A stretch of DNA of 64,000 nt from Octopus sinensis (taxonomy: Eukaryota), in NCBI RefSeq assembly GCF_006345805.1, contig NC_043000.1, positions 106,640,001 through 106,704,000 of the forward strand. Direction: 5' to 3'. A program made the position numbers and the translations under genes. Below, piece after piece: positions 6,050 through 50,801 of this stretch; the stretch's first letter is position 1; every line of letters starts with the position of its first letter. The notes beneath the pieces were generated by a model. The model was not told where the DNA came from, ran no database searches, and saw only the letters and a program-made list of their open reading frames with translations.

Positions 6050-6207
6050 TTATCCACTGGAGATTTTGCCAAGTTCAATATTCTTCTGAATTTCTTCGAG
6101 TACCATTCTGGTAGCGCACTGCACGGCACTTACCTGACTTGACCTTTCACAGTGGCGTTTAGTGTTTGTAATGATTTCAGTCACATCAGCTGGACATCTC
6201 CATTCGA
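6050..6207 (-). CDS. Gene A exon 4 (terminal): LEWRCPADVTEIITNTKRHCERSSQVSAVQCATRMVLEEIQKNIELGKISSG*
   Basis: actttcag acceptor, phase 1 matching exon 3, TAA at 6052-6050; paralog of identical length (158 nt) at 28909-29066. Confidence 0.88.
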
Positions 6208-6365
6208 CTGAAAGTTGACATAAAGTTATATATATATATGTATACATATACAAGCACAAATACATATAAATAGATGAAAGTAAGAGATTTCTTTTAAAAA
6301 GGAAAACAAAACACAACGAATATAGGGATCAATACATGCGTATTAATTTTTATTATATATTGCTG

Positions 6366-6580
6366 GTAAGGCGGCGAGTTGGTAGAATCGTTAGCACGCT
6401 GGGCAAAAAGTTTTAGCGGCATTTCGTCCGTCTTTACATTATGGGTTCAAATTACGCCGGGGTTTGCTTTGCCTTTCATCCTTTCGGGGTCGATAAATTA
6501 AGTACCAGTTGCGATCTAATCAACTGGCCCCCTCCCACCAAAATTTCAGGCCTTGAGCCTTTAATAGAAAGGATTATATA
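6366..6580 (+). mobile_element. tRNA-derived SINE family 1 (gcctttcatcctttcggggtcgataaattaagtaccag core, Nin/Deu-domain-like)
   Basis: Head ggtaaggcggcgagttggtagaatcg plus conserved core; further copies at about 685-830, 1230-1345, 5050-5620, 7007-7207, 12470-12600, 33790-34190, 46410-46625, 49198-49820, 57655-57840 and 59945-60090. Confidence 0.85.
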
Positions 6581-7006
6581 TTGCTGATAGCGGCTTACTA
6601 TAAATAGTTTTACGCAGCGGTGGTACCTTCGTCAATGAGATGAATTCAAGGCGTAGATTATAAATAGGTTACCATTGCCGAGAGAGAAAACACAATAGAA
6701 AAATAAATAAAAATGCAAATGAAGAAGTGACAACGAGTTAAATGAAAGTAAAAAAAAAAAAAAAACCTGGAAAAGCCTAGACATAGACGCAACTATCAGC
6801 TGTTGACTCAAACTAAAAAGTGATTCTAGCTCCTAAAGAATAGTTTCATATGTTGAGAAATACCTCAAACATATTCATCAGGCACAAACCACATATTATA
6901 ATGTTATACGTAGTTTGAGCCCCCTGAATATGTTTGAGATATTTCTCAAGATATGAAACTATTAGTAGCACACAAGAAAGGAATATATTATATATTAAAT
7001 AATATT

Positions 7007-7207
7007 TAAGGCGGCGAGCTGGCAGAAACGTTAGCACACCGGGCGAAATGCTTAGCCGTATTTCGTCTGTCTATTCGTTCCGAGTTCAAATTCTGCCGAG
7101 GTCGACTTTGTCTTTCATCCTTTCGGGGTCGATAAATTAAGTACTGGGGTCGATATAATCGACTTGCCCCTCCCTCAAAATTTCGGACGTTGTGCTTAGA
7201 GTAGAAA
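7007..7207 (+). mobile_element. SINE family 1 copy
   Basis: Near-complete match to the 6366-6580 copy. Confidence 0.85.
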
Positions 7208-7278
7208 ATAAATTTTAATAATATTTATCTCTCACCAGATGGCGTACTATTTTTGTTGACCTTACCATCACGGACCAG

Positions 7279-7326
<48 letters not shown>

Positions 7327-7371
7327 GAGAATGTTAATGGATGGAAGCACTCCGTCGGTTACGACGATGAG

Positions 7372-8132
7372 GGTTCCGGTTGATCCGAATCAACGGAACA
7401 GCCTGCTCGTGAAATTAACGTGTAAGTGGCTGAGCACTCCACAGACACGTGCACCCTTAACGTAGTTCTCGGGGATATTCAGCGTGACACAGAGAGTGAC
7501 AAGGCCGGCCCCTTGAAATACAGGTACAACAGAAACAGGAAGTAAGAGAAAGTTGTGGTGAAAGAGTACAGCAGGGATCACCACCATCTCCTGCCGGAGC
7601 CTCGTGGAGCTTTTAGGTGTTTTCGCTCAATAAACACTCACAACGCCCGGTCTGGGAATCGAAACCGCGAACCTATGACCGCGAGTCCGCTGCCCTAACC
7701 ACTGGGCCATTGCGCCTCCACTCGCGAGAATGTTAATACGTAGTATACTGTTGTGGCACATCATTGGTTACAACAATAAGACTTCTAGTTGATCCGATCA
7801 ATGGTACAGCCTGCTCGTGAAATTAACGTGTAAATGGCTGAGCACTCTACAGACACGTGTACCCTTAACGTAGTTCTCGGAGAGATTCAACGTGATATAG
7901 AGTGTGAGAGTGTGACAAGACTGGCCATTTGAAATACAGGTAGAACAGAAACAAGAAGAAAGAGTGAGAGAAAGTTGTGGTGAAAGAGTACAGCAGGGTT
8001 GTCTACCACCCACTGCCGAAGCCCCGTGGAGCTTCAGGTGTTTTCGCTCAATAAATACTCACAACGCCCGGTCTGGGAATCGAAACCGCGATCCTACGGC
8101 CGCGAGTCTACTGGGTCATTGCGTCTCCACAC
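7372..8132 (-). mobile_element. Two tandem copies of tRNA-derived SINE family 2
   Basis: A-box/B-box head (tggcccagtgg...ggtttcgattcc) on the minus strand; the same family occurs at 14030-14320 (-) and 62914-63215 (+). Confidence 0.85.
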
Positions 8133-8972
8133 GTGGTATACACAGTGTGAATATCTGCACTTGGAAACTTAGTCTCCATAGGTCAGACTTAGACATCACC
8201 ATTTTTTTTTTGGGGGGGGGGGGGGAACTAGTTGATGCTGTTGCACGCAAATTCCTTCTTTCCACGCCATCCAGGCTGCTCATAGAATAGTCCATAGTGA
8301 TGTTATGGACGCTGCCGTCAGAATGCAAAGAGCTGGAACAGACACTACATGGTATTCACCTATGTAGACAGCTATGCACTCTAACAAGACTTAAATGCTG
8401 TATACGACTGGAAGAATGAGAATAAAATGTCTTTCAATGGCATGAAATCGGACTCACCGTTACGTAAAGGGGTCCTCCCACAACAAGTATGTAGCCGACT
8501 AATGATCATACACTGATCAGAACAGCTGTTAATGTTACATCCATGTATCCTACTGTTACATACAGCGATTTGAATTTTAGTTTCTCTAGATAGCCGTAGA
8601 ATTAGGGTACACTTGTGATGAAAGCCAATTATTCCGAAAAATATCCATAAGAAGGTTCCCGATAAGTTTGCATTATTTTTACCTCCAAAGCTAAATAACT
8701 ACACTTGTCTACAATATATAATGTTTCAGGCATTCTGTCTGTCTCTATCTTCCTACCCCTCAGTGTGTTTGTGTATGTGTGTATGTGTGTGTGTGTGTGT
8801 GGGGGTATGTATGTGTATGCATGTGCGTGTGCTTGTGGTACGTTTAGATAAATGTCGATAGGCAGATGTAGACAGAATAACTTCAAACGATCTTCGTTCC
8901 TAGGCGTTCATGTTAACACTTATAAAATTACATGTGTGTCAAAGAATTCTCAAAAAACTAAATAAGACTTAC

Positions 8973-9054
8973 GGAAACTACGTTTTCTACCAAACTTCAA
9001 ATCACAGTCGTCTGCTTTGAAAGTAATCACCAACGGCGTTCCATCGATTTCGAA
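8973..9054 (-). CDS. Gene A exon 3: FEIDGTPLVITFKADDCDLKFGRKRSF(+C)
   Basis: ttttcccaag acceptor and C|GTAAGT donor; 82 nt, phase 0 to 1; homologous to the start of gene B exon 3 (FEIDGTPLVITF identical). Confidence 0.9.
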
Positions 9055-9122
9055 CTTGGGAAAATAAATGAAAATAAATGTTAAAAATATTTATTGTGCA
9101 CACACACATACACAGACACACT

Positions 9123-9166
<44 letters not shown>

Positions 9167-10172
9167 GGCTAGGCTCGAAACGTAAATGACGATACGGTTT
9201 TCAAAAATAATATATGGAAAAATAGAATCAAGTTAAGTCATTTTACTCGACTTTACGCCTGCCCGCCACAGATATTGGAATCGTAAAATCACTAGAAAAC
9301 TGTTAAAAGCACATAAAATCATGCTACTGTACAATAAATAAGAATAAAAGCATATAAAATCATTTTAAAATACTTACAGTAAATGTTAAGATACATACCA
9401 TAAAGTAATGTAGCTAAGTGAACGAAATCATGAAATCACGAAATCATCAAAATGTATGTTCGTATTTGCAAATTTAAAATGATTTAGTCATTTTTACAAT
9501 TGCGAAATAATAATAATTACTGAATTTGTTTTTTTAATTTAAAAAAGCCCTTTATTTTACCATGTCTTATTGCAAACCGCATTCATAAATAAAGTGTTAG
9601 CGATGTACGGTAAACACCGCCAAATTGTACTTTTTTTTTACTGCACGGTATTAAAAAAATTAAAAAAAAATATTTGTTTGTAAGCTTAAAACAGGTTTTT
9701 ATTAACCATGTAGTATTGAAAATGCATTCACATTCATAAATAAAGTACAGAACTGGCAATGGTTATTATCGGTTTAGCCTAAGTAAATTCGGCCTAGTCT
9801 TGCCTAGAGATAATTTAATTCGACTTAAGTCGAAAAACGACTTAAGTCGTGTCTCTTGGAACCAATTAACAACATAGGGCGAGGTAAGCCTGTTTATACA
9901 TAAAAACGAACACACACACATACACACACGCACACACACACGCACACACGCACACACACACACACACACACATACACACAAGCAAAGGTACTTGTCTTCA
10001 ATCATCAAGATAAAATACTTGTTAATTAAATTATATTCACTAGCGTGATAATAATAATGATGATAATAATAATAGCTTTCAGTCATACTGTAACATCTCT
10101 TATCCTTCACTCGCCCCAGGACGCTAGGTCTGTCTCGGCAAGTGACTGTAACAAAGATGCAGATTAAAAGTA

Positions 10173-10218
<46 letters not shown>

Positions 10219-10571
10219 GGACTTACAAACACATATAACATACAGAAAATTGCACTACTAGGCACTGCACACATCCTACGCAGAACACTTTCCATACAAT
10301 AACCATCAGAGCATCACAACATCACCAGCACATACCCAAGGCACACAGAGCTGCGCTCGGTAGTGAAGTGAAAGCACGCTATAAAAATAAAACTACTGAA
10401 TAATAATAATAATAATAATAATAATTGATATGAAATCACTATGTCACGCACATATGGTTGTGATGCATGTGCCTGGTGTACCCTTATCAGACGGGTAGTC
10501 ATGATGGGTATACTGGGCTTCGTATATTTTACCCCAGGGTCACTTTGATGGCATGCACTGCTCTCTCACTC

Positions 10572-10632
<61 letters not shown>

Positions 10633-12398
10633 TTAATAATAATAGTGGAAATAATAATAACAACAGACAGCAAATTGACTCCAATTCACCAGACATTGTG
10701 ATTAAGGACTACAACAGACAAACTTGTCTGTTAGTAGATATGTCTGTCCCACAAGATTAAAATGTCTCAAGAAAAGAATACGAAAATCTTTTTCACTATA
10801 AAGATCTGCAAATTGAAATACCGAAAATGCTGAAGCTGAATACTATGATAATACCAGTGATAACTGGTGCGTAGGGAATGATAAAGAAGGGATCTGGACT
10901 GTTTTGGTCAAGGAATCTATCTGTTTTTCAGATAGATTCCTTGACCAAAACAGTCCAGAAGTGAGGTAGGGACATCGGTATGGGCGCTAGGAATACCAAA
11001 TGCTCAGTACTTAATATGAAAAGAGAGAAGATAGCAGCCTGCAGAGGATTGCGGTTACCATCAGGAGAGACCATGGGTGAACCCGACGGTAGTGGGTATA
11101 GATATCTAGGGATTTTGGAGCTGGATGACATTCTACACAGAGAAATGAAAGTCAAGGTCAGCGAGGCGTAACAAAAAAGGGTGAAGATGGTGTTGAAATT
11201 CAACCTGAATGCCCAAAATTTGATTACCGCAATGAATATCTGGGTAGTTGCGGTGGTTAGATACAGTGCGTCCATCCTCAAATGGACTAAGGAGGAAATA
11301 TCAACACTGGAGAAAAATACGAGAAAGTTGCTAAACGCTGCATGGGGCACTACACCCTAAAACAAAGTAAACAGACTGTATATGAAAAGAAAGAATGGTA
11401 GCTGAGGACCAATTAGTATAGACCATTGTATAAGGAGTGAAAGGATAACGCTTGCCGAGGACTTGATAAAGAGTGATGAAGACCTGCAGCGATATGCTGC
11501 GAAAGATATGGGTGTAAATGCAGATGAAATAATGGGCAAGGAAGAGTTTAACCAAAGAGCTGAGGAGAAGAGAAAAGAAGACCTTTTTGAAATGCGGATG
11601 CATGGACAGTTTGAAAGGAATACACAAGATGTTAAGGATAATATAGCATAGTGAGCGAGGTGATTTGAAGTGTACCACCGAAAACCAGAGCATTGCTGCA
11701 CAAGACCAGGCTCTCGTTAGCAATTCAGTGAAATATAACATCTATAAAACTTCTGACACCCAGAAATGCAGACTCTGTGGAAAGAGTGTGGAAAATGTGA
11801 CCCACTTGGTAAGTGGATGTGAGAGCCTTGCACAAAAAGAATACAAGCGCCGCCACGATAAAGTGTGTGCGTGTATCTTCATTGGCTCTTATGCCGTAAA
11901 TACCAATATGAAGTAACAGAGAACTGGTATGGGCATCTACCAAGTAAAGTTATGCAGGAGGATGGAGAAGTAAGGACACTCTGAGACTATGATTTTCAGA
12001 CGGATCGTGTAATCGAACACCGTCGGCCGGATATTGTCATAGTGAATAAGAGAGACAAATACCGCCAGATCATTGTTGTAGCCATACCAAATGGCATGAA
12101 TATTGTGAGTAAAGAGGTTGAAAAAATCACCAAGTACTCCGAATTGAAAGTAGAAATGGCAAGACTATGGAATGAGAGATACCAGTGGTGATCGGAGCGT
12201 TGGGCTCAATCTCATTGAAACTTCAAAACTTCTTAAGCCAACTAGAAATCCCATGCAAGATTGATGTTTTACAAAAAGCTGTCTTATTGGGCACAGCGCA
12301 CATCTTAAGGAAAATATTATCTATCTGAGGTCCTTGACAGATGACTAAAACTCCGGTGCATTTTTACCTACACTGTGTTACGAAATAATAATAATAAC

Positions 12399-12432
<34 letters not shown>
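10219..12432 (+). mobile_element. Dong/R4-clade non-LTR retrotransposon remnants (restriction-like endonuclease type) in (TAA)n tracts
   Basis: CRLCGKSVENVTHLVSGC zinc knuckle, RRHDKV, PDIVI and QKAVLLGTAHILRK motifs; (TAA)n flanks and tails; three fragments (10219-10430, 10670-10893, 10960-12432). Confidence 0.8.
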
Positions 12433-12436
<4 letters not shown>

Positions 12437-12851
12437 TGATGATGATGATGATGATAATAATAATTATTATCATTTCAAATTTTCGTCACATTTTTGTGGG
12501 GAAGTTGGAGATGCATCGATTACATCAGCTGGTACTTATTTTATTAACCTCGAAAGGATGAAAGGCAAAGTCGACCTCGACGGAATTTGAACTCGGAACA
12601 TAGCCACCATACCACCACCACCACCACTACCATCATCATCACAACAACAACAACAACAACTCCAAATTCTCAGCTTAGTTTTGTGGTTAGTATTATGGAT
12701 ACATTTAGGTTCAGATTAGATTTTTCGGATTATTGCTATTAAGCACCATAAAACATTTGCATAGATTTATTAGTCAACTCTGTGTTACAATGAATGTAAA
12801 CAACATAGCTATAGAATATATGGACAGACAGGCAGACAAGCATATAGATAG

Positions 12852-12888
<37 letters not shown>

Positions 12889-13226
12889 AAAAAGAAAGAG
12901 AGAGAGAGAAGGGGAAAGTGTTGTACATGTACGTTTCGATTGTTCTTGGAATCTTCGTTAGCAAATGTGTGCCCTCTTTGTCTATCAAACTGTTTATAAA
13001 CACACACCAATCAAATCAAGCATGTAAGTTGTTGTTTCTTTTTTTTTTATCCCCAAAAATATTGTATAAACGTGTTGGTCGCAATCATCGTAACACACAG
13101 TGTTGGCTGATACACATAAAAATATGTTCAATCGTACACGATAGGGACGAATCGAAACCCTGCAATTTCGAATTATTGCATTAAAAGCCAATCCAGGGAA
13201 AGGGATAAACAAGTCATTTTACATAC

Positions 13227-13399
13227 CTGCCCGTGTCTTTCCACGAATATCTCCTTGATGCCATGGAAGAATCTTTTAAATTTATTTCCCAGACCTTTTT
13301 CTAAACTTTCTTTTATTTTAGCGGCCGTTTGCTTTAGATCTAAGCCTTCACAGGAACTCAATTGGCAGTGGGCAGTGACCAACACAAGTAAAAAGACAA
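13227..13399 (-). CDS. Gene A exon 2: IVFLLVLVTAHCQLSSCEGLDLKQTAAKIKESLEKGLGNKFKRFFHGIKEIFVERHGQ
   Basis: ctacag acceptor and CAG|GTATGT donor; 173 nt, and 13+173=186 gives phase 0; hydrophobic signal core; clear paralog at 34379-34548. Confidence 0.9.
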
Positions 13400-13598
13400 C
13401 TGTAGATAAATATATATATATATATATATATGTATGTAAGTAGAATCAATGCGAAAATATGACAAAACTAAATATTTTAATTAAAATACACTTCATCTTG
13501 CAGTCTTCTAGAAATTGGGATCGAACCCCCGAACTACAAATCTATCTCTGATCACGTCTGTGCACGTAGAGTAACACACACACACACACACGCGCACA

Positions 13599-13629
<31 letters not shown>

Positions 13630-13846
13630 CACAAGCAAATACACATTTATTTGGAAAAACTGGAAAGTCACTCTATTGGTTCTTGGGGTTTCTCGTTCAG
13701 ACAACGTCAAATTCAATCCATTTTACATTGATTCAAAACTGCAGACGGTAGAGTACTACGAATAAGACCAGCGTCAATTAACAGTTGACTCCGAATGGAT
13801 ATATTAACTTTACGACCTACACCGAATACTATCTCGTTAGTTTCTT

Positions 13847-13917
<71 letters not shown>

Positions 13918-28799: not shown

Positions 28800-28885
<86 letters not shown>

Positions 28886-28908
28886 CACTTCGTGTGTGTG
28901 AATCTATG

Positions 28909-29066
28909 TTATACGCCATGGATTTTGCCAGTTTCAATGTTCTTCTGAATTTCTTCGAGTACCAGTTTGGTAGCACACTGCACGGCGCTTTTCGGACTTG
29001 ACTTTACACAGTGACGTCTGGTTAGTGTAGTGATTTCAGTCACATCAGCTGGACATCTCACTTCAA
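28909..29066 (-). CDS. Gene B exon 4 (terminal): FEVRCPADVTEITTLTRRHCVKSSPKSAVQCATKLVLEEIQKNIETGKIHGV*
   Basis: actttcag acceptor, phase 1, TAA at 28911-28909; same length and Cys spacing as gene A exon 4. Confidence 0.85.
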
Positions 29067-29496
29067 CTGAAAGTTGACAAAATGTTATATATGTTTAGAT
29101 ATACATGCACATATACATATACGTATAACAGTTGCAAGTAAGTGATTCTCAGAAAACAACGAATATAGGAATCAGTTCACAAATTCAACAACCCCGGCCG
29201 CTCCATAGTTTCCACCTGTAACTGCCCCACAGAACACATTTCCAAATACCTCGACCTCATCCTTTCCCTTTAGTCGCTGCCTTCAGTCTCAGTTACATTA
29301 CACCAACCACAACGAAGGGAGAAGTTAAAATAATAGACAGAGAACACCACTGGAAAATACAAAAACTAAAAGAAGCAGCTCAACAACCTCCTAAGCAGAG
29401 CGAGTGCAGATATGAGCAGCATATGGGAACCAGTATTAAGGAAGGATAGAAAAATTTTAGACCTATAACGCCTAAAATTCACTCCATAATTGTCCA

Positions 29497-29760
29497 CGGG
29501 CATATAGCGTAGTAGTTAAGAGCGCGGGCTACTAACCCCAAGATTCCGAACTCGATTCCAATAAATGACCTGAACAATAATAATAATAATAATAATAATA
29601 ATGATAATACCTTAGGAATGAGAACCCAGGTTCGAAATTTCCCCAAGACACCTGAAGAAGGCTGGAGGGTATATCAGCCGAAACGTTGTGTTAACAACAA
29701 ACAAGTTGAGGACAAATATCCGTCGAATGTAAAAATTTAAATAATGTACATAATTCCTCA
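29497..29760 (+). mobile_element. tRNA-headed SINE with a Penelope-like, hammerhead-containing tail
   Basis: tagcgtagtag A-box and ctcgattcc B-box; acacCTGAAGA...GAAAcgttgtgt motif at 29648-29691. Confidence 0.65.
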
Positions 29761-29839
29761 TCTCTTCTATATAGGACTACATAGTCGGAGTATCTGCAGT
29801 TAGAAAATTGCACCTTAATGCACAAATTAATTATTTTTC

Positions 29840-30500
29840 TTTTACAAAGATCTAGCAGATGCCGATGAATGCAAGTCTCCCCTTTCCTCGCCATCGAAGC
29901 TATTTAGCAGCAGTGGTGTCATATGGACGGTGCCTTGAGAATCCAGTGAACTGGAACAGATGCTGCATGGCATTCTCCTATAACAATGCTGGTGGTCAAA
30001 ACAGACGACAATTATGCGCGCCAACAGATAGATGCTCATTACAGTTGGAAGAATGCGAATATCACGTCTTTTAATTTCGCGATACCATCCTCTCTGTTAC
30101 GTAAAAAGGAACTCCAACGAATGAACCATATCCAAGACGTGAAGAGAATTCAAAACTCTTTCGTTTACCTGGGTATTTGGATGCCTTCAAATATACAACG
30201 GCTTCACGAAATGTTTGCGTAAACTGATCAAACATTTCTGAGGACTTCAAAAGATATAGAGAAGCATTTTACACCAGTTTTTTGCGTCAGCCGTCTTTAT
30301 CCAATACGCCTCAACCAAAGCAGAGAATAGCTCCTAGTTCTTAGCTCCATTATCTAAAAATCTCACATATATTAACAAAGCTAACAAAAATATTTGGCCC
30401 ATAATATGTGAATAGAGACGATACGAAGGAAAAACATTTTACACTGAAAGCGATGTTTCAGCTCTCCAATGAATCAAAGAACACAAACTAAAATAAAATA
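29840..30500 (+). mobile_element. Degraded LINE reverse-transcriptase fragment in gene B intron 3
   Basis: FVYLGIWM thumb-region motif; many disablements. Confidence 0.4.
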
Positions 30501-31126
30501 TGTATAGGCTGGCATCTGTGGTTTAGCATACATACAGAATATATGTTCCCACCATATATTTATAGTCGTAAACCTTCGCTGCCATTCACAATTGAGCACG
30601 ACATGTTAACATGTATTATGGTTTCGCTAACTGTTTCTGTTGCCTATGTAATCACAAGGAGATTTACACACATTCTCGGCCCTTTCAACTTGACTCTAGA
30701 TGAGACAGTTCGATGAAGAGGGCTCTTCTCTACAATTGGTCTTATACTCATTTTCAGGTGAATTGACATGAGCAACGTGCAAATCAAAACGACTGTTAAT
30801 GTTATACTTTTGAAAGCTACTGTGATAGCGATTTCGATTCAAAGTTTTCTAGGTAGCCAACGAATCTTAGTACACTTCTGAAGAGGGCCAATCATTCCGA
30901 AACATATCCATAAGAAGATTCCCAGTACTTTTCCCTGCTTGCTTTAGAAAAGCAGGTAGGTTTTAATATCTTTTTTAAACGCTAAAGCTAAGGCAATTGA
31001 GTACGACATATATTTCAGGTATTCTGAATTAGCTTGTATTCTGGGTGTCAATCTGTTTCTCTCTCTCCCTCTGTGTGTGTGCGTGTCAGTGCATGTCAGT
31101 GTGTGTGTGCAAATCAGTGTTTGCGT

Positions 31127-31174
<48 letters not shown>

Positions 31175-31341
31175 GTGCGCGCGCGCGCACGAGTGGGCGT
31201 GCGGTTGTGTATTTGTGTAGCGGAGAGAGAAATAGGTAGATAGGGAGATGTAGACAGAACTGCATCAAATGATATCTCTTGCTATGCATGCATGTTACCA
31301 ATTATAAAATTACATGTGTATCTAATAATTCGCAATAAACC

Positions 31342-32195
31342 AAATAAGACTTACATGGACTTCGTTTTCCAATAATCTCCGAATAAGACTTAGATGGACT
31401 TCGTTTTCCAAAAATCTCCGAATAAGACTTAGATGGACTTCGTTTTCCAATATCTCCGAATAAGACTTAGATGACTTCGTTTTCCAATAATCTCGAATAA
31501 GACTTAGATGGACTTCGTTTTCCAATAATCTCCGAATAAGACTTAGATGGACTTCGTTTTCCAATAATCTCCGAATAAGACTTAGATGGACTTCGTTTTC
31601 CAATAATCTCCGAATAAGACTTAGATGGACTTCGTTTTCCATAATCTCCGAATAAGACTTAGATGGACTTCGTTTTCCAATAATCTCCGAATAAGACTTA
31701 GATGGACTTCGTTTTCCAATAATCTCCGAATAAGACTTAGATGGACTTCGTTTTCCAATAATCTCCGAATAAGACTTAGATGGACTTCGTTTTCCAATAA
31801 TCTCCGAATAAGACTTAGATGGACTTCGTTTTCCAATAATCTCCGAATAAGACTTAGATGGACTTCGTTTTCCAATAATCTCCGAATAAGACTTAGATGG
31901 ACTTCGTTTTCCAATAATCTCCGAATAAGACTTAGATGGACTTCGTTTTCCAATAATCTCCGAATAAGACTTAGATGGACTTCGTTTTCCAATAATCTCC
32001 GAATAAGACTTAGATGGACTTCGTTTTCCAATAATCTCCGAATAAGACTTAGATGGACTTCGTTTTCCAATAATCTCCGAATAAGACTTAGATGGACTTC
32101 GTTTTCCAATAATCTCCGAATAAGACCTAGATGGACTTCGTTTTCCAATAATCTCCGAATAAGACCTAGATGGACTTCGTTTTCCAACAATCTTC
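31342..32195 (-). repeat. 39-bp tandem array, 22 copies (+ strand unit gaataagacttagatggacttcgttttccaataatctcc)
   Basis: Counted directly; near-identical units; four 1-nt deletions (copies at about 31420-31457, 31458-31494 with two, and 31612-31649). Confidence 0.97.
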
Positions 32196-32251
32196 GCTTC
32201 ACAGTTGTCTGCATAGAAGGTAATTACCAGCGGTGTTCCATCGATTTCAAA
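31355..32251 (-). CDS. Gene B exon 3, extended by 21 in-frame 39-bp repeats: FEIDGTPLVITFYADNCEAKIVGKRSP[S(K/R)SYSEIIGKRSP]x21
   Basis: ctatctaag acceptor at 32252-32253; the only GTAAGT donor lies in the last repeat copy (31354-31349); 897 nt as assembled, and 897+4 deleted nt = 901 = 82 (gene A exon 3 length) + 21x39. Confidence 0.75.
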
Positions 32252-33550
32252 CTTAGATAGAAAAAGTAAGGAAGATATGTTGAAAATTGTTACTGTATAC
32301 AAACTCATGCACTCATACACAGGTGCAAATACGGGCGTGCGCACAGACGCACGCACAGACGCACATACACACGCACAGACACACGCACAGACACACGCAC
32401 ACACACGCACAGACGCACATACAGACACAGACGCATACACATGCACAGACGCACACACACACACAGACGTGCGAACGTAAAGGTAACTTTGTAGCCAATA
32501 TGCCGGATATATCTAAGCATTTTTCTTTAAACGAAAATGACCTATTGCAAGGTTTTATATAGTACTATTTGTTTCAAAATATATTTGGATATATATATTT
32601 TTGTGGTGCTATGATATGTCTGAAGTTGTTCTTTTGTAGGTGTCTATGATGTGCTAAGCTTTTTTTTATCGATAATTTTATTTTTGTGATCGAAGAAAAT
32701 CACCTCTTTATGTTTTACTTAATATATTTTCGTGTAATTTCAAAATTGATATGCAATACATAAAAAGGAACAGACCCAAGAGAAATGGGTTTTATTACTG
32801 AAGAGGACTGGTACAGGATAATATAGCTTGTATTGTGGTTTGATACTCTGGAGGAAAGATAGTTAATGCGACGTAGTATCATCAATTGGAAGCATTGCAA
32901 AAGAAAATGCTGCGATTAAGACAGAATAAGCATTTGTTTTTCGTATTGAAATCAGAAAAGACTTTATTTTCAATCTCCTGTTACCACTAACAATTCCAGA
33001 CATATATATAGAGAGAGATACAACTCCTACAACATTTAAAATAAATACGACAGCCACACTAACGCACTTAGTAATCCGAATATATGAAAATTGGAACAGT
33101 TCTCTGGAAATGCATTTGAAAGTTCAAACAGTATCTAAGGCTAAGTCTTCCATACTGGATCTTTACATTCTATTGCTTGATCAATTGTTCTCTTCTGTAT
33201 AAAGTACAGAATTCAATCTTCTTGAATTCTGTACTTTATTCACATCATAATTATTTACCATCTCAACCTTTACCATTTCCTCAAATTTTATCTAATTACT
33301 TTTTGCTGTTACTATTCTTAGGTTAAAGAATAACAATAACAATAACAACAACAACAACAAATTCTTAACTTATATGAAGGACTAATTTTGTCGTTAGTAT
33401 CATGGTTGTATCAAGGTATAGATAAAATTTCAGTATTATTGTTGTAATGTATTACAGAATATGTCCATAAATTTATTAGTCAAAACTGTGTTACGATGAG
33501 TGTAAAGATCTTCACAATATGATCGTAGACAGATAGTTAGATCGAGAGAT

Positions 33551-34378: not shown

Positions 34379-34548
34379 CTTCCCACTTTCCGGGAAAAGG
34401 AGCAACTTGAGTTTGAAGAATTTTTCAAGTTTATTCCCAAGTCCATTCTCTAGAATTCCTTTTATTTTGGTAAGTGTTTGCTGTACATCAAAGCCTTCAC
34501 AGGGATCGAACTGGCAGTAGGCAGTGACCAACACAAGTAAAAAGACAA
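34379..34548 (-). CDS. Gene B exon 2: IVFLLVLVTAYCQFDPCEGFDVQQTLTKIKGILENGLGNKLEKFFKLKLLLFPESGK
   Basis: tttacag acceptor and AAG|GTATGT donor; 170 nt, and 13+170=183 gives phase 0; paralog of gene A exon 2. Confidence 0.9.
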
Positions 34549-41826: not shown

Positions 41827-41839
41827 TAGAAAGTCTCAT
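41827..41839 (-). CDS. Gene B exon 1 (coding part, MRLS plus first base of I)
   Basis: ATG AGA CTT TCT A|GTAAGT; flanking intron and 5' sequence are homologous to gene A exon 1. Confidence 0.85.
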
Positions 41840-42231: not shown

Positions 42232-43928
42232 AGTGCTCCAGTACCGGAGAAGGAGGGAAGAAAGGACATTGACACAACAAACACCAGCACCAAAACAATG
42301 GAACTCCGTCGTAACAATTTCGCCTCAGCTGCGAAGCAGATCTCTGAGGAAATAAAAGTTACGATGGAGGAGATTAAAAATTCGAAGGTTTTGTTGAGAA
42401 AAGAGGGAAATAGTGTTTTCTTAAACACTCCCCAAGAGCTCATCAACGAAACAAAGAAAGACAATAATTTACAGAATTTTCGAAAGAAAACAAAAGAAAA
42501 ATCACAAATGCTACACCTCAACAACTCGAAATAGCTCTAAAGCCCATATGGGGGCAAAAGAGCTATGTGACAAAAGGCAAGCGGTATGGAACCGTGGAAG
42601 TGAGATTCCAACAGAGAAAGAGGCACGGAAGAATGCCATTTCGCCCTTGCAAACGGACAGTTTGTTACTCGTGCCAACGTATCTCGGTCAAAGAGTAATA
42701 AAAATCCGCATCGACCTTGTCCCGCCTGAACTCAATATTCCTTGGCTAGTGGCAGCTGTCCTCTATGACAAAGAGGACAACGCCACTATTCTCCAAGTCC
42801 ACAGGCATAGAGAAAAAAAACTGGTCAGGTATAGAAGTTCAACTGCTGGTACAAATCCAGCAGGAAAACATTAATGCCATACCTGACTCGGTAAATTTGC
42901 CGGACGGCACCAGGCTGCACGTTGCTGTGGAGGGGCGAAAGCCAAAATGTTACCTCTGCAGCAGCGAAAGCCACCTAAAAATGGACTGCCCCATTTACAA
43001 GAAAAGAATGGAGGCAGACGGCAAGAGGCAGCAGCAACAACAACAACAAAAGACAACAACAACAACAACAACAACAGAAACAACAAAAGCACGAAACACC
43101 AAAGGCTGCCACACCACCAACACCATCACCACCACCACGACGAACGACACCACCTCCAACAACCACAAAACCAACACCAACCCGAACACCAAGAAAGACA
43201 ACAAAAAAGGAAGAAAAATCACCGACACCGTCACCATCACCAACAGATACAGCAACACCACCGCTACCAGCAGAACCAACAATTTTTCGCCCTGCTGCTG
43301 AAGCGGACCCGACAACCATCCCCTTTCCGGATCAGGACAGCTCGGATTGTGCGAGCACTGATACCGAGAGAGGTGAATGGCACACAGTGCCTCCGAAGAA
43401 GAAGAGGAGGAAGAAGCAAAAAGACACACAGGGGAAGCACAAACAAATAGTGCTTCCCAACAACAACAACACGCACTCACAACAGCAAACAACAACACCT
43501 TCGACACCACTACTGCCACTTCCCCACACACCAACACACACAGACTCGATTACAGCCATAAACACAAAAAATGAAAAACTCGTTTCATATATAAAAGACA
43601 ACACAAGTACAAACATTACAGATTTTATAATACCTACACACAACACACCACCAGCACACATTCTCACCATTAAAATTAACCAAAAGACATACAGTGACAT
43701 AAAAGAGAAATTCCCTAACGACGTCGGATCGCTAGGGAGAAGTTTCTCTAAGAAACTTTATAAAAACATTGTGGAAACACCCGTGCAAAAGCACAAGGGA
43801 GCCACTCCTACCACCACCAACAACAGTAAGTAGAGCCTTTTTCTACTTTTTTTCTGTCACCTTTTGAAACATGGCAAACTTAGAATCGGTTGCTTGAATG
43901 TGAGAGGCCCTGGGTCACCTTGGAAACA
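42232..43928 (+). mobile_element. L1/Tx1-type LINE 5' portion: ORF1 with CCHC knuckle and the first codons of ORF2, 3'-truncated
   Basis: KCYLCSSESHLKMDC; ORF2 start MANLRIGCLNVRG at 43871. Confidence 0.8.
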
Positions 43929-44135
43929 ATAACAACAACAACAACAACAAATTATTAACTTATATGAAGGACTAATTTTGTCGTTAGTATCATGGTTGTA
44001 TCAAGGTATAGATAAAATTTCATTATTATTGTTGTAATGTATTACAGTATATGTCCATAAATTTATTAGTCAAAACTGTGTTACGATGAGTGTAAAGATC
44101 TTCACAATATGATCGTAGACAGATAGTTAGATCGA

Positions 44136-44174
<39 letters not shown>

Positions 44175-44325
44175 TAAGAGAGAGAGAAAGAGAGAGAGAG
44201 AAAGAGAGAGCGAGAAAGAGAGAGAGAGAAAGAGAGAGAGAGAAAGAGAGAGAGAGAAAGAGAGAGAGAGAAAGAGAGAGAGTAAGAGAGATAGAGATAG
44301 AGAGTAAGAGAGATAGAGAGAGAGA

Positions 44326-44374
<49 letters not shown>

Positions 44375-44461
44375 GGACATGTGTATTGGAATCTTCACCA
44401 GCAAACGCGTACCCTCTCTATCTGACAATTGTTTATAACCCACACAAATTAAATCAAGCAT
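43929..44461. repeat. Near-identical dispersed copy of gene B intron 2 segment 33343-33745
   Basis: Same unique sequence on both sides of a (GA)n tract; only a handful of substitutions plus a difference in microsatellite length. Confidence 0.9.
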
Positions 44462-44870
44462 ATTTTGATGAAAATTTTGATAAATTTTGACGAAAATTTT
44501 CAAAAAACTTTTCTAAAATTTTGATGCAAATTTTCAAAAAATTTTCCAATATTTTGATGAAAATTTTCAAAAAAACTTTTCAAAAATTTTGATGAAAATT
44601 TTCAAAAAACCTTTCTAATATTTTGATGAAAATTTAGAGAAAAATTTTCAAAACTTTTGATGAAAATTTTCAAAAATTTTTATTAAAACTTTGAAAAAAC
44701 CTTTTAAAAATTTTGATGGAAATTTTCAAAAAACTTCTTAAAAATTTTGATGATAATTTTCAAAAAGCTTTTCAAAAATTTTGATGGAAATTTCAGAAAC
44801 CTTTTCAAAAATCTTGATTGAAATTTTCAAAATCCTTCTCAAAAGTTTTGATGAAAATTTTCAGAAGAAT
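44461..44870. repeat. AT-rich satellite (ttttgatgaaaattttcaaaaa-like), inverted relative to 51350-55600
   Basis: Reverse complement of the Helitron-internal satellite unit. Confidence 0.85.
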
Positions 44871-45261
44871 TACTGGTATCCTTTATATATTACTATATTT
44901 TATATCTTGTATCTTATATGCAAAGAATAATATGCTATATGTATGTTATTATAATTATCAGTTTAATAAATAAATAAGTTAACATAATTTAATGTCTAAA
45001 TTTGATGTACCACCTATTTTTCTACTCCATTTTCTTATTTCCTATATAAATTAATGGTAAGATATCTCTTTACCTTCACCCATTTAGTACACTCAGTAAT
45101 GTAATTGCAATGCAATACAAAACACTTGTGTATTAATAATTGGGTATTCTACCGGCAGTATATTGGATAGATATTTTCCCTTAGTGAGTTGGATTCACAA
45201 CCTCTAACTTTGTGGTGCACCTGAGCACTGTATACAATAATTTCATTATATATATAATATA

Positions 45262-45320
<59 letters not shown>

Positions 45321-45959
45321 TGATATATACAGATTATGTATATTACTCATTACCCATAACTTTGCTGCTGGATAATGGCCTAGTCAAGATATAACGATAG
45401 CAGTCATTATAATACATGAAAACCCTTAAAAGCAACACTTGAGGCCACCCCAAAGTCCAATGGGGAAGTTAATAAATTCATACAATTTGTGACATTGTTC
45501 TGGTTTAATGAAAGAAAACAGAATTATGAAAAATTTTATATTTATTTATAAATGTTTTTATTTATTTTACCATATTCTGACCCATCAGTCATTAGTGGGC
45601 TTAGTGTGAAAATTTCTTTAGTCTAGTTCTTCGGCATAATCACAGTTGCCCTCCAGTTTCGTCTTGTGAAAGTTTTGTCTTGTGACAGTTAGTAACAGGA
45701 TACTAAGACATTCTATAGGACAATATACAGGCAGATGGTAGACTGAAACTTAATGCAATGTACGCATTTTAGTGCTTAGTTTGATATGTTACAAAAACTC
45801 CAATTTGAACTGCAGTTGAATGTGTGATGTTGAGACTGCCTTTCTGGAGTGGCTAGAAGTAGCTTCTCCATGAGCAGATAGGTATAGATTAAAATAGAAA
45901 TGAAGAGGCAAATCGTTTTGCAAGACTCAACAGAGATATCAAATTTAGATGTAATCTTT

Positions 45960-46320
45960 TATTCTTTTACTTGTTTCAGTCATTTGACTGTGGCTATGCT
46001 GGAGCACCACCTTAAGGGGTTTTAGTCGAACGAATCGACCACAAAACTTATTCTTTATAAGCCTAGTACTTATTCTATCGGTCTCTTTTGCCAAACCAAT
46101 TAGTTACGGGGACGTAAGCACACCAACATCAATTGTCAAGTGATATTGATGGGGACAAACACAGACACAAACACACAAATATATATATATACGACGGACT
46201 TCTTTCATCTACCAAATTTACTGAAAAGGCTTTGGTTGGCCAGAGGCTATGGTAGAAGACATTTGCCCAAAGTGCCATGTTGTGGGATTGAACTTGGCAC
46301 CATGTAGTTGGGAAGCTACC
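45960..46320 (-). mobile_element. tRNA-derived SINE family 3 (CORE-like: ggcaagtgtcttctactatagcc...ggatttggtagacggaaactgaaag)
   Basis: Matches copies at 63790-64000 (+), 20455-20645 (-, tail), 47700-47930 (+, tail) and the heads inside the 1.1-kb tandem units. Confidence 0.8.
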
Positions 46321-47571
46321 TTTTCTATTATATGTAAAATTAAATGTCTTTGTCAATTCTTGCCAAACAGTGAGCCTTTCCATTTCTATTTTACTTTTTA
46401 TATATACCGCAAGGCGGTGAGCTGACAGAAACATTAGCACGTCGGGCGAAATGATTAGTGGTATTTCATCTGTCTTCACGGTCAGAGTTCAAATTCTGCT
46501 GTGGTCAACTTTGTCTTTCATATTTCGGGGTCGATAGATTAAGTACCAGTTGCGTACTGGGGTCGATCCAATCGAGTAGCCCCTTCCCCAAACATTTCCG
46601 GCCTTGTGCCTAGAGTAGAAAAGAATATATGTATACGTAACAGCTTCTAAAGACTCTCATGCCATCGAATAATTCCGAAGCGTTACAGAGTTACTTCCCC
46701 TGAACTTACAAAGCTTATTTAAGAGTTGTTTCCCTTATATTATGAAGCTAATGTTTTCTGAGTTATCGCCTTTGAATATGACTCAAAATTTTGCGATGGA
46801 TTCAGAATTGCTAGCTCATTATATAAGGTTCTAATTATACATAAATAGTTCTAATTATATATAAATAGTTAATATTTCGTTGTGATTCGATGAATTGGTT
46901 TCTAGCAGAGCCACGGTTGTAAACTGTTGTAGCTTTGTCAAGAAATGACTATTTCACAGTGTTATGACTCCGTATTTAATTTAGGTTTTATAACGTTTGT
47001 GATTTCTTGCTTTTTTTTAAGATGAAGATTTACATAAATATACTACAAACACACCCTTCCACACACACACGCCAAATAACGCAATACTGAAGCGCACATA
47101 CGCAAATAAACAGTGAACTGTGCTAGAAATTTGCCCGAAAAAATTTAGACATACACATCTAATCTATCGCTTCGTTTTCGGTTTTCCTTTTGAATGAGAT
47201 TTCTACAAAATGTGATATTTATAGGCAACCTTTGTTCTATTATAAAATGTCAACATAGCTTGATTTTCTGTCTTCCACAGGGGTATCGCATACTATTCGG
47301 TTGAATGTGTCTTACTCCTTGTAGTTACGTAAGACGAATATTTATTCATAGTTTAACTTATGCTTATGAAACTCTAAGGATTTTAAAATGCGAATTAATT
47401 TCATGAAAAACTATCATATGTCCTTTAAATTTCCCACATGTCTAGTCACCATCAAAAAATATAATATATATATAGTAGCCACTATTTTTGAAATAAATCA
47501 AATGATAAACAATATACATATAGTAGCTACTATGTATATCATTTGATTAATTTAAAAAATAGTGGCTACTA

Positions 47572-47650
<79 letters not shown>

Positions 47651-48564
47651 GTGTGTGTGAAATTAATATGTGACAGTTATTCGGTAGCCATGATAAAACT
47701 CCGAGTTTCGGATGTCGGGGCGGAAACCCACGCTGCCATCTCTTGACAATTGATGTTGATTGCCTTGAGTCGCAGTAACTTAACAGTTTGGCAAAAGGCA
47801 CCGATAAGATGAGCAACAGACTTATAACATATGTACGGTGACGTGGGGGGGGGGATTTGATCGTCTAAACACTTTAGGTCGGTACTCCATCATCGTTGCA
47901 ATTCAAGGATTAAAACAAGTAAAAGATAAAAGAAAAAAACGACAAAAGCCGTGATCTTGAGCCTGGAACCATAATGAACGAGGCGCCGCGCTTATCAAAA
48001 ATTAGTCTGAGGGTGAAGTTGAGATCGTTCCGAAATATTAATGGGATGATGGATTTGTGAAAGCTTATGTTTCTGGGGAAAAAAAACAGAAGCTTAGACA
48101 ATGCTTTTACCACTTTGTCGGTCGCTATAGCAGGTTGCATTGCACAATGACTGGTACTGTTTTGACTACAAGTTTTGTGTCAGAGTATCTTTTTCCTAAA
48201 AGGGTTGCCTTCGCCACGGCTTTGTTGAAAACAACAAGAACCTCGTCTACCTCCTGAGAAATCTAGTTAACCCATGGATGTTTTGGGTTTGTGTGGAGTG
48301 TGGAGTCGCCCCTTAATTACAATACATACTCAAATACATACATGCTTACATAGTACGTACGCACATACCTACCAAACTACCTATATATCTACCTACTTAC
48401 CTACTTATATGCATACGTACGTACATACATACATACATACATACACACATACATACATACATACATACATGCATGCATGCATACACAAATTCACTGACAC
48501 TCATATATACGTGTTTATACATGCGAATCTATCTATCTATCGATCTATCTACCCCCGTCTCGCT

Positions 48565-48633
<69 letters not shown>

Positions 48634-48749
48634 CAGTAAACCTTTACTATAGCTCGTATATTACTGCAATTTTCAGTAAATATTGGTGCATTGTTGTACT
48701 ATTTTCCTATATGTATGTATGTATATATATACATACATAGATACATACA

Positions 48750-48781
<32 letters not shown>

Positions 48782-48937
48782 CACAATACATTTGTGCAAG
48801 TATACATGTGTGTGTGCATCCGTGCGTGCGCGCGTATGCTCGTATACGTACACGTACAAGCACACACACGCATGACTCAGATAGACAAACCAGTTTACTT
48901 ATTGCAATTTAATAGAAGCAAAGGAAAAGCTGGAAGC

Positions 48938-49005
<68 letters not shown>

Positions 49006-49197
49006 CTTAGGAAAACGTAATGTGTTTCGATAAATAAAATATTTGTGTTGCTAACATAATAAATCACCTAACATTGAAACAAGAAAAGAAAATACCTAAG
49101 GTAAATATCTATATAAAATATTCGTATGCCCTATTTACCTGGAAGAAAATCTATATAGAATGTTTATCGAACATGTAGGCATTATTATTACAGCTAT

Positions 49198-49820: not shown

Positions 49821-49859
49821 CAATTTATTTATTTCTGTGAGAAATTGTTAGTGAAGAAC

Positions 49860-50415: not shown

Positions 50416-50503
50416 TGTGTGTGTGTGTGTGTGTGTATGTATATGTGTACATACGTATATGTATGTATATGTGTCTACGTACGTATATGTATATATATGT
50501 ATG

Positions 50504-50655
<152 letters not shown>

Positions 50656-50766
50656 TATATATATATAAAGTTAATCCAAACATGAAAACACAAAGAGAAA
50701 CCACAACATGGAACATGGAACAAATATAGTGTTATTGGACGCCCAGGAAGGAAGGGAAGAAGGAGG

Positions 50767-50801
50767 GTTTAACGTTTCGAGCGGAGCTCTTCGTCAGAAA
50801 C
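50767..50801 (-). ncRNA. Minimal type I hammerhead ribozyme motif
   Basis: gttt CTGACGA a GAGC-tcc-GCTC GAAA CG TT aaac. Confidence 0.7.

What the first reader, a model, noticed from the sequence alone, without database searches (positions are those of the whole stretch)
31342..32195. Exon expansion by tandem amplification of a splice junction with donor knock-out
The 39-bp unit comprises the last part of exon 3 plus the first part of intron 3. The final copy keeps the ancestral donor (AGT CCA T|GTAAGT, equivalent to AGT TTC C|GTAAGT in gene A). All 21 upstream copies read CTAAGT or CTAGGT. Splicing should therefore skip to the last copy and exonise former intron sequence in frame (39 = 13 codons). 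The arithmetic is exact: 82 + 21x39 = 901 nt = 897 observed + 4 deleted. The insert falls between the first two mature Cys; without it, DNCEAKIVGKRSPFEVRC aligns with DDCDLKFGRKRSFLEWRC of gene A.
Basis: seen in the sequence. Interest (0 to 1): 0.92.

Follow-up and report, generated by a model that had tools for sequence, protein, structure and literature searches.

The report
Splice-junction repeat that lengthens an octopus exon
A 39-base piece spanning an exon-intron border of a small secreted-protein gene in common octopuses has been copied in tandem (22 times here, 11 in the sister species). All copies but the last have lost the splice signal, so former intron sequence probably became protein-coding repeats, but in this assembly four missing bases break the reading frame.

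Summary
Window 31343-32196 (minus strand) holds 22 head-to-tail copies of a 39-bp unit made of the last 27 nt of exon 3 plus the first 12 nt of intron 3. Copies 1-21 read CTAGGT or CTAAGT; only copy 22 keeps GTAAGT.

The window is Octopus sinensis (assembly of Li et al. 2020). The paralogue B' and O. bimaculoides have a single junction copy with GTAAGT. The true O. vulgaris orthologue (98.6% identical) has the same array with 11 exact copies. So the array and the donor loss arose once, before the two species split.

Corrections:
- The "21 knock-outs" are one G>C change that was amplified.
- The intact last donor is a necessary edge effect, not evidence of selection.
- The four missing bases shift the phase, so as assembled exon 4 reads LK-stop.

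The deletions are about 44 times denser than in the flanks and look like unpolished long-read errors, but this is unproven. No transcript evidence was reachable. Each repeat carries a Gly-Lys-Arg site, so a polyprotein-like peptide precursor is possible. The closest precedent is the origin of antifreeze glycoprotein from trypsinogen.

The parts
41827..41839 (-). Gene B exon 1 (ATGAGACTTTCTA, donor GTAAGT); encodes MRLS plus the first base of an Ile codon
   Evidence: identical to the O. vulgaris orthologue
34379..34548 (-). Gene B exon 2 (170 nt): rest of the signal peptide and the N-terminal helical part; donor GTATGT
   Evidence: one difference from O. vulgaris (Q/K)
32170..32251 (-). Ancestral 82-nt exon 3 (FEIDGTPLVITFYADNCEAKIVGKRSP); its last 27 nt are the exonic part of copy 1
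   Evidence: identical to O. vulgaris over 82 nt
31343..32196 (-). Array of 22 copies of the 39-bp unit (27 nt of exon plus 12 nt of intron); 854 nt = 22x39 - 4
32164..32169 (-). Position of the ancestral donor, now CTAGGT (first of 21 inactivated donors; copies 1-2 CTAGGT, copies 3-21 CTAAGT)
   Evidence: single-copy relatives read GTAAGT here
31349..31354 (-). Only retained donor, CAT|GTAAGT, at the end of copy 22; 8 of 9 matches to the U1 consensus; predicted 3' end of an 897-nt exon 3
31452..31641 (-). Stretch holding the four 1-bp deletions (after 31641, 31494, 31473, 31452). The first shifts the frame from SEIIGKRSPSKSY to ENEVHLSLIRRLL. The other three lie within 43 nt and sum to -3.
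   Evidence: absent from O. vulgaris; about 44 times the flank density
29067..31354 (-). Intron 3 counted from the retained donor; mosaic similarity to paralogue B'
28909..29066 (-). Gene B exon 4 (acceptor TTTCAG). In its native phase it is an intact ORF, (F)EVRCPADVTEITTLTRRHCVKSSPKSAVQCATKLVLEEIQKNIETGKIHGV-stop. In the phase imposed by the 897-nt exon it reads LK-stop.
6050..15825 (-). Gene A, an intact paralogue with one junction copy: exons 15825-15813, 13399-13227, 9054-8973 (82 nt, donor TCC|GTAAGT), 6207-6050
   Evidence: 97% identical to O. vulgaris P0001

Best explanation
Gene B belongs to an octopod-only family of small secreted proteins of about 140 aa. They have five conserved cysteines and an invariant Lys-Arg (GKR or GRKR) site between Cys2 and Cys3.

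Shown from sequence:
- B and B' arose by duplication after the O. bimaculoides lineage split off. [quoted passage not shown]
- The internal junction then acquired G>C at donor position +1, plus two further changes (AAG>GAG and GTT>ATT).
- This internal junction is the only part that unequal exchange or slippage can multiply. It expanded to 11 copies in O. vulgaris and 22 in O. sinensis.
- The outermost 3' half-unit cannot be homogenised, so it still carries the ancestral GTAAGT.

Inferred:
- Because this is the only good 5' splice site left, the spliceosome should define an exon of 82 + 39n nt. That turns 12 nt of former intron per unit into codons and inserts n copies of S(P)SKSYSEIIGKR at the dibasic site. 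The G>C change also turns a would-be Cys codon (TGT) into Ser (TCT).
- The four 1-bp deletions seen only in the O. sinensis assembly are most probably uncorrected long-read consensus errors inside a perfect repeat. The real O. sinensis gene would then be in frame with 21 extra units.
- If the conserved GKR site is a prohormone-convertase and amidation site, the insert makes the protein a polyprotein-like precursor.
For: - Array anatomy.
- Single-copy ancestral junctions with GTAAGT in gene A, paralogues B' and C (both species) and O. bimaculoides.
- Tree from intron 2: ((B_sin,B_vul) 99.5%, (B'_sin,B'_vul) 98.5%) 95.3%, with O. bimaculoides at 93%.
- The orthologous O. vulgaris locus L013 is 98.6% identical over 10 kb. 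It has 11 exact 39-bp copies with the same C at +1, the same CGGAG and the same GTT in the first copy.
- My splicing of L013 with the last-copy donor reproduces the annotated 270-aa protein P0007 letter for letter.
- The only strong 5' splice site in the 897 nt is the last one.
- Outside the array, B_sin and B_vul differ at 5 of 423 coding sites (3 synonymous, 2 not). All other splice sites and exon 4 are intact.
- Deletions: 4 in the 854-bp array (22 nominal units, 858 bp) against 1 lineage-specific 1-bp deletion in 9449 flank columns (Poisson P = 3e-6). The deletion:substitution ratio is 4:3 in the array against 1:51 in the flanks (Fisher P = 4e-4).
- G000 matches the PacBio + Hi-C O. sinensis assembly: 13,516 scaffolds, 2719.2 Mb.
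- KR is invariant in all family members, including Argonauta.
Against: - No RNA evidence was reachable. No transcript-derived protein with the repeat exists in the collections searched. P0007 may be an ab initio model that simply follows the long ORF and the only good donor.
- As assembled, the window copy is out of frame and ends two codons into exon 4. The deletions avoid the AAAA run, where homopolymer errors would be most expected.
- An 897-nt internal exon is unusually long for exon definition.
- The family evolves fast (pairwise dN/dS 0.4-1.0), so constraint on B cannot be demonstrated.
- All four substitutions within the arrays are non-synonymous.
- No O. sinensis protein for gene A or gene B is on record.
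Confidence: 0.65

Rival explanations
1. The four deletions are real. In O. sinensis (or in this haplotype) gene B is a recent pseudogene, or it encodes a truncated product: signal peptide, N-terminal half, about 14 good repeats and a frame-shifted tail. That product lacks the C-terminal three-cysteine half. The array is then decaying.
For: The sequence as assembled gives phase 0 at the donor and LK-stop in exon 4. The flanks of the same assembly are clean, with 1 lineage-specific 1-bp deletion in 9.4 kb, so the assembly is not error-ridden in general. None of the deletions lies in the AAAA run.
Against: A 4:3 deletion:substitution ratio against 1:51 in the flanks is not what neutral decay gives. 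Exon 4 and every splice site are intact, and only 2 non-synonymous changes separate it from O. vulgaris. O. vulgaris has no indel in 11 copies. Perfect repeats are where short-read polishing of PacBio or ONT contigs fails (general knowledge).
Confidence: 0.22
2. The array is a neutral minisatellite in a gene that is silent or dispensable. The long ORF and the O. vulgaris gene model are by-products: the period happens to be a multiple of 3, two of three frames are open, and a gene predictor follows the ORF. Nothing is exonised in vivo, or splicing fails and the transcript is degraded.
For: There is no transcript evidence. The frame is open in two of three phases, so openness is weak evidence. 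Copy number doubled or halved within about 2.5 My. dN/dS in the family is high. The variants inside the arrays are all non-synonymous.
Against: All exons, splice sites and conserved residues of B are kept in two species. The array has persisted since before the species split with perfect periodicity in O. vulgaris. The O. vulgaris annotation used Iso-Seq and RNA-seq as well as ab initio predictors.
Confidence: 0.12
3. Transcripts use another 5' splice site. Candidates are CTG|GTAATT near the start of exon 3, TAG|GTCTTA created in copies 1-2, or TAA|GTCTTA four bases past the last donor. The last of these would restore phase 1 in the assembled sequence.
For: These GT sites exist. An exon ending at 31351 would be 901 nt, which is phase 1 and in frame with exon 4.
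Against: They match the U1 consensus at only 3-4 of 9 positions (7 of 9 for CTG|GTAATT, which gives the wrong phase and is unused in all annotated paralogues). The log-odds scores are -6.8 to -10.8 and +1.4, against +4.5 for CAT|GTAAGT.
Confidence: 0.05

Closest known systems
Origin of notothenioid antifreeze glycoprotein (AFGP) from trypsinogen (Chen, DeVries & Cheng 1997, as summarised in PMC3449122)
   Same: In both cases a short element straddling a splice junction of an ancestral secreted-protein gene was amplified internally. Part of each coding repeat therefore derives from intron. The signal peptide and terminal exon of the parent are retained, and the product has the layout of a polyprotein with short cleavable spacers.
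   Different: AFGP used a 9-bp element at the intron 1 / exon 2 (acceptor) side, after most of the parent gene had been lost, and its function is proven. Here the unit is 39 bp at the donor side, and the internal donors had to be inactivated. The whole parent protein is kept around the insert, the copy number is only 11-22, and neither expression nor function is known.
Multi-copy amidated neuropeptide precursors, e.g. arthropod GSEFLamide precursors (PMC4696782) and bivalve [FY]SEF[LV]GKR proteins (P0030, P0037)
   Same: Both have a signal peptide and tandem short units that each end in Gly-Lys-Arg. The unit end S-E-I-I-G-K-R resembles S-E-F-L-G-K-R. These precursors are the best non-octopus phmmer hits.
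   Different: There is no homology: the octopus repeat demonstrably arose from its own exon-intron junction. The hits rest on the GKR periodicity, and there is no Pfam match. Processing, amidation and neuronal expression are untested.
Coding minisatellites (VNTR exons) and exonisation of intron sequence after splice-site loss
   Same: The array has perfect tandem units with a length divisible by 3, copy number varies between close species, and intron sequence is recruited when a donor is lost.
   Different: Here the repeat unit itself contains the splice site, so amplification and donor loss are coupled. I know of no catalogued case on the donor side (from memory; a library search found none).

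Membership tests
Octopod small secreted 5-Cys protein family (P0001-P0005; no Pfam family) | N-terminal MRLS signal-like hydrophobic start, four-exon structure with phases 1/0/1, and the invariant residues C21, C79, K86-R87, C94, C109, C120 and the CPADVTEI motif | tested here: met
   The pieces of gene B carry all of them. Pfam and PDB sequence searches find nothing. AlphaFold models have pLDDT 37-40, so no fold can be assigned.
Splice-junction-derived coding repeat (AFGP-type origin) | The repeat unit is colinear with a single-copy exon-intron junction in the ancestral or paralogous gene | tested here: met
   27 nt of exon plus 12 nt of intron match the single junctions of B', C, A and O. 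bimaculoides.
Splice-junction-derived coding repeat (AFGP-type origin) | The repeats are in frame with the flanking exons and free of stops | tested here: inconclusive
   Met in O. vulgaris, with 11 x 39 nt and P0007 reproduced. Not met in the window as assembled: 897 nt, phase 0, LK-stop. The deletions may be assembly errors.
Splice-junction-derived coding repeat (AFGP-type origin) | The repeats are present in mature mRNA and protein | not testable with these tools
   No reads or transcripts are available. No transcript-derived protein with the repeat was found in the collections.
Multi-copy amidated neuropeptide precursor | A signal peptide plus tandem peptides that each end in Gly followed by a dibasic site | tested here: met
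   The sequence reads SPSKSYSEII-GKR, 10 times in P0007 and 14 intact units in the window before the first frameshift. The signal peptide was judged by eye only.
Multi-copy amidated neuropeptide precursor | Homology to a described neuropeptide family, or demonstrated processing and neuronal or endocrine expression | tested here: not met
   There is no Pfam hit. The resemblance to GSEFLamide-type precursors is motif-level only and the origin is independent. Processing and expression are not testable here.
Pseudogene | Frameshift or premature stop | tested here: met
   As assembled, a net -4 nt gives a stop two codons into exon 4.
Pseudogene | Decay elsewhere: lost splice sites, stops in other exons, relaxed dN/dS, or a broken orthologue | tested here: not met
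   All splice sites and exons are intact, with 3 synonymous and 2 non-synonymous differences from O. vulgaris. The orthologue is intact.

The most novel reading that the evidence does not exclude
Within the O. vulgaris species complex, a structured secreted protein has been turned into a de novo polyprotein precursor. Amplification of its own convertase and amidation site, together with 12 nt of former intron, means that processing at each GKR would release 10 (O. vulgaris) to 21 (O. sinensis) copies of an amidated decapeptide, SPSKSYSEII-NH2. Four of its ten residues are encoded by ex-intron sequence. Its S-E-hydrophobic-hydrophobic-amide end converges on arthropod GSEFLamide-type peptides. 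This would be a datable birth of a multi-copy bioactive peptide gene, with the single-copy ancestor still present as paralogue B'.
Probability: 0.15. Interest if true: 0.85.

Novelty: new variant of a known kind. Interest (0 to 1): 0.55.

Why it matters
This is a clean, polarised example of how new coding sequence can arise. All the stages are preserved: single-copy junctions in an outgroup species and in three paralogues, and two expansion states (11 and 22 copies) in sister species that split about 2.5 My ago. The splice signal is part of the repeat unit, so the case shows that amplification of a junction must be coupled to inactivation of the internal donors for the repeats to enter the protein. 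It also shows that the surviving terminal donor needs no special explanation.

The insert multiplies a conserved Gly-Lys-Arg site. That makes the origin of multi-copy peptide precursors directly testable in an animal with good transcriptomic and peptidomic resources.

There is also a practical lesson. The four frame-breaking deletions sit in exactly the kind of perfect repeat where polished long-read assemblies stay wrong, so gene calls across such arrays need read-level checks.

Tried and rejected
1. I first took L001 (O. vulgaris, 129.6 Mb) for the orthologue and concluded the array was absent from O. vulgaris. That was wrong. L001 is the orthologue of paralogue B' at C4:40.75 Mb. The true orthologue, L013, has the array.
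2. A dispersed satellite or transposon inserted at the junction is rejected. The unit is unique to this locus in the 2.72-Gb genome and is colinear with the ancestral junction.
3. An assembly artefact creating the whole array is rejected. Two assemblies, from different species and different technologies, both have it.
4. Family and fold assignment failed. Pfam gave nothing and PDB sequences gave nothing. AlphaFold2 on 5- and 6-sequence alignments gave pLDDT 37.5 and 39.7. I did not run fold search, because a model of this quality gives meaningless matches.
5. Searches for transcripts or peptides carrying the repeat found only P0007. Literature searches for the LOC identifiers, the UniProt accession and the peptide found nothing.
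6. dN/dS as a test of constraint on B since the species split has too few changes to decide (5 in 423 nt).
7. Cryptic donors that would rescue the frame are too weak to favour.
8. A literature search for a donor-side junction amplification returned nothing relevant.

Full report
**What is in the window**

The window is eukaryotic: about 35% G+C and dense microsatellites. The gene lies on the minus strand. Tandem Repeats Finder gives a single outstanding minisatellite at 31343-32193, with period 39, 21.9 copies and 98% matches.

Read on the minus strand and parsed in the exon register, it is 22 units over 32196-31343.
- Unit 1 is CGAAGATTGTTGGAAAACGAAGTCCAT + CTAGGTCTTATT.
- Units 3-21 are CGGAGATTATTGGAAAACGAAGTCCAT + CTAAGTCTTATT.
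- Unit 22 ends in GTAAGTCTTATT and runs on into unique intron sequence.

So 21 units carry C where a donor G should be, and only the last has GTAAGT.

**The gene and the species**

Six-frame searches located two paralogues.
- Gene A has exons at 15825-15813, 13399-13227, 9054-8973 and 6207-6050.
- Gene B has exons at 41839-41827, 34548-34379, 32251-31355 and 29066-28909.

A protein search with gene A found only octopod proteins of 137-145 aa, from O. vulgaris, O. sinensis, O. bimaculoides and Argonauta hians. They have a hydrophobic MRLS start, five invariant cysteines and an invariant Lys-Arg between Cys2 and Cys3. There is no Pfam or PDB relative. AlphaFold models were too poor to use, at pLDDT 37-40. 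Nothing marks the family as a toxin, and its function is unknown.

The window's assembly has 2,719,151,902 bases in 13,516 contigs. Contig C4 is 164,836,235 bp, the same length as the contig that carries the O. sinensis proteins. These figures match the O. sinensis assembly of Li et al. 2020 (PacBio plus Hi-C) as tabulated in PMC10700109.

**Which sequences are the right comparators**

O. sinensis has two clusters of this family on C4. One is the window, at 106.64 Mb, with genes B and A. The other is at 40.73-40.76 Mb, with paralogue C (P0002) and paralogue B' (P0004).

I first mistook the O. vulgaris locus L001 for the orthologue of B. It is in fact the orthologue of the B'/C cluster. The real orthologue of B is L013, OX597817.1:63.81-63.84 Mb, which is 98.6% identical to the window over 10 kb.

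Intron 2 gives the tree ((B_sin,B_vul) 99.5%, (B'_sin,B'_vul) 98.5%) 95.3%, with O. bimaculoides outside at 93%. The B/B' duplication is therefore younger than the split from O. bimaculoides (about 34 My according to PMC10700109). It is much older than the split between O. sinensis and O. vulgaris (about 2.5 My).

**Ancestral state and origin of the unit**

B' in both species, C in both species, A in both species and O. bimaculoides each have one junction...GATT[A/G]TTGGAAAACGAA[G/A]TCCAT|GTAAGTCTTATTTGGTTTATTGCG. The repeat unit is colinear with the last 27 nt of the exon plus the first 12 nt of the intron. The unit exists nowhere else in the genome. The array therefore arose in place from the gene's own splice junction.

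**The array is shared**

L013 has 11 units, each exactly 39 bp. Units 1-9 read CTAAGT, unit 10 reads CTGAGT and unit 11 reads GTAAGT. It shows the same GTT in the first unit and the same CGGAG/ATT in the internal units. The array and the donor change therefore predate the species split, and copy number has since diverged (11 against 22).

Splicing L013 at the last-unit donor reproduces the annotated O. vulgaris protein P0007 (270 aa) exactly. That protein has ten extra copies of SPSKSYSEIIGKR between ...AKIVGKR and SPFEVRCPADV..., then an intact C-terminal half.

The O. vulgaris annotation combined Iso-Seq, RNA-seq, protein alignments and ab initio predictors. I cannot tell which of these supports this model.

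**How the pattern should be read**

In a two-copy state, only the internal junction can be multiplied by unequal exchange or slippage. That junction is the 3' part of copy 1 joined to the 5' part of copy 2. The outer 5' and 3' halves always stay at the edges.

All internal units share three derived states: donor G>C, AAG>GAG and GTT>ATT. The two edges keep the ancestral states. This is the expected signature of one mutated junction that was then amplified.

The "21 knocked-out donors" are thus one event, and the surviving last donor needs no selective explanation. The G>C change remains meaningful in two ways.
- It removes the only competing strong donor. The remaining GT sites score far below CAT|GTAAGT.
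- It changes a would-be TGT (Cys) codon to TCT (Ser) in every unit.

**The frame problem in this window**

Exon 3 is 897 nt as assembled. The ancestral exon is 82 nt (phase 1), and 82 + 21x39 = 901 would keep that phase. Four single bases are missing, after 31641, 31494, 31473 and 31452.

The first deletion moves translation from SEIIGKRSPSKSY into the other open frame, ENEVHLSLIRRLL. The next three lie within 43 nt and sum to -3. The ORF stays open to the donor, but the donor is now in phase 0 and exon 4 reads LK-stop.

**Are the deletions real?**

I aligned B_sin, B_vul, B'_vul and B'_sin across the flanks and counted lineage-specific events.
- The flanks show one window-specific 1-bp deletion and 51 window-specific substitutions in 9449 columns.
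- The array shows four deletions and three substitutions in 854 bp (22 nominal units, 858 bp).
- That is a 44-fold excess of deletions (Poisson P = 3e-6), and a deletion:substitution ratio that differs from the flanks (Fisher P = 4e-4).

Ordinary neutral decay does not look like this. Residual consensus errors of a long-read assembly inside a perfect repeat do, because short reads cannot be placed there to polish (general knowledge). O. vulgaris shows no indel.

Against the error reading, none of the deletions is in the AAAA run, and the same assembly is clean in the flanks. I rate error at roughly 2:1 over real, and only reads can settle it.

Outside the array, B_sin and B_vul differ at five coding sites (3 synonymous, 2 not). 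Every splice site and exon 4 are intact. So if the gene is broken in O. sinensis, the break is recent.

**What the insert would do**

The insert sits exactly at the family's invariant dibasic site, and each unit carries its own Gly-Lys-Arg. If that site is cut by a prohormone convertase, trimmed and amidated (established chemistry for G-K-R, but untested here), the protein becomes polyprotein-like. It would yield 10-21 copies of SPSKSYSEII-amide plus the two original halves.

A library-wide phmmer search with the array ORF found P0007 as the only true relative. The next hits were multi-copy GKR precursors:
- APGSEFLGKR x n proteins, which match the arthropod GSEFLamide family described in PMC4696782;
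- bivalve [FY]SEF[LV]GKR proteins, including a Crassostrea virginica locus.

This is resemblance by motif and periodicity, not homology. Equally possible, the repeats are just a disordered spacer tolerated at an exposed site. The models show them as coil, but at very low confidence.

**Comparison with what is known**

The nearest precedent is the notothenioid antifreeze glycoprotein gene. There, a 9-bp element straddling the intron 1 / exon 2 border of trypsinogen was amplified into a polyprotein coding region (PMC3449122 citing Chen et al. 1997).

The octopus case shares the principle and differs in four respects:
- it lies on the donor side, so the internal splice sites had to be killed;
- it keeps the entire parent protein around the insert;
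- it is young and small (11-22 units);
- it has no demonstrated product.

It is also an instance of a coding minisatellite and of exonisation after splice-site loss. I therefore class it as a new variant of a known kind, not a new category.

**Verdict**

It is very probably right about the exon structure in O. vulgaris, but it overstates the donor pattern and is wrong about the frame in this assembly.
- Expression is unverified.
- Interest is moderate (0.55). It is a tidy, datable case with all intermediates available and a testable peptide-birth hypothesis, but in an uncharacterised gene and without RNA or protein evidence.

Noticed in passing
window 28860-31200 (intron 3 of gene B), compared with L013, L001 and L015: Downstream of the array the orthologues are less alike (96.5%) than upstream (99.5%), and similarity is mosaic. 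For example, 29788-29603 is identical to O. vulgaris B' (0 of 186 mismatches) but has 11 mismatches to its own orthologue, and 30188-29989 behaves likewise. This suggests interlocus gene conversion, or shared haplotype classes, between clusters 66 Mb apart.
   Followed up: partly
G000:C4:40,728,830-40,759,497 (L010, L011, L015): A second cluster of the family lies on the same chromosome: paralogue C (P0002) and paralogue B' (P0004), each with a single junction copy. More weak or broken copies are at C5:109.0 Mb (with stops) and C9:20.28 Mb.
   Followed up: partly
window 15600-20011: About four tandem copies of a roughly 1.1-kb segment lie just upstream of gene A exon 1. All of them match a single stretch of the O. 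vulgaris locus (L012 7769-9216).
   Followed up: no
window 44100-55610: A large satellite block. Arrays of 34-bp A/T-rich units (AAAATTTTCA...GATGAAAATTTT) alternate with 10-bp GGCAATCTCC arrays, repeated as a higher-order pattern.
   Followed up: no
window 22190-23337 (+), 42425-43833 (+), 25318-25731 (-): These are retroelement remains: two related gag-like ORFs, one with a CCHC knuckle, and one ORF that looks like an AP-endonuclease domain of a LINE.
   Followed up: no
L001 10001-33957 (O. vulgaris P0006) and L001 29205-29327: The O. vulgaris gene model for B' is chimeric: unrelated upstream exons are joined to B' exon 4. O. vulgaris B' also reads DSYDC where O. sinensis reads DSCDC, so the first conserved cysteine has shifted.
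   Followed up: no
window genes A and B: No O. sinensis protein for either gene is present in the 5.8-billion-protein collection, although gene A is intact. The O. sinensis proteins on record come from the other cluster.
   Followed up: no
window 31625-32260 (+): The array is also open on the opposite strand (211 codons), and in two of three frames on the coding strand. ORF length alone is therefore weak evidence here.
   Followed up: yes
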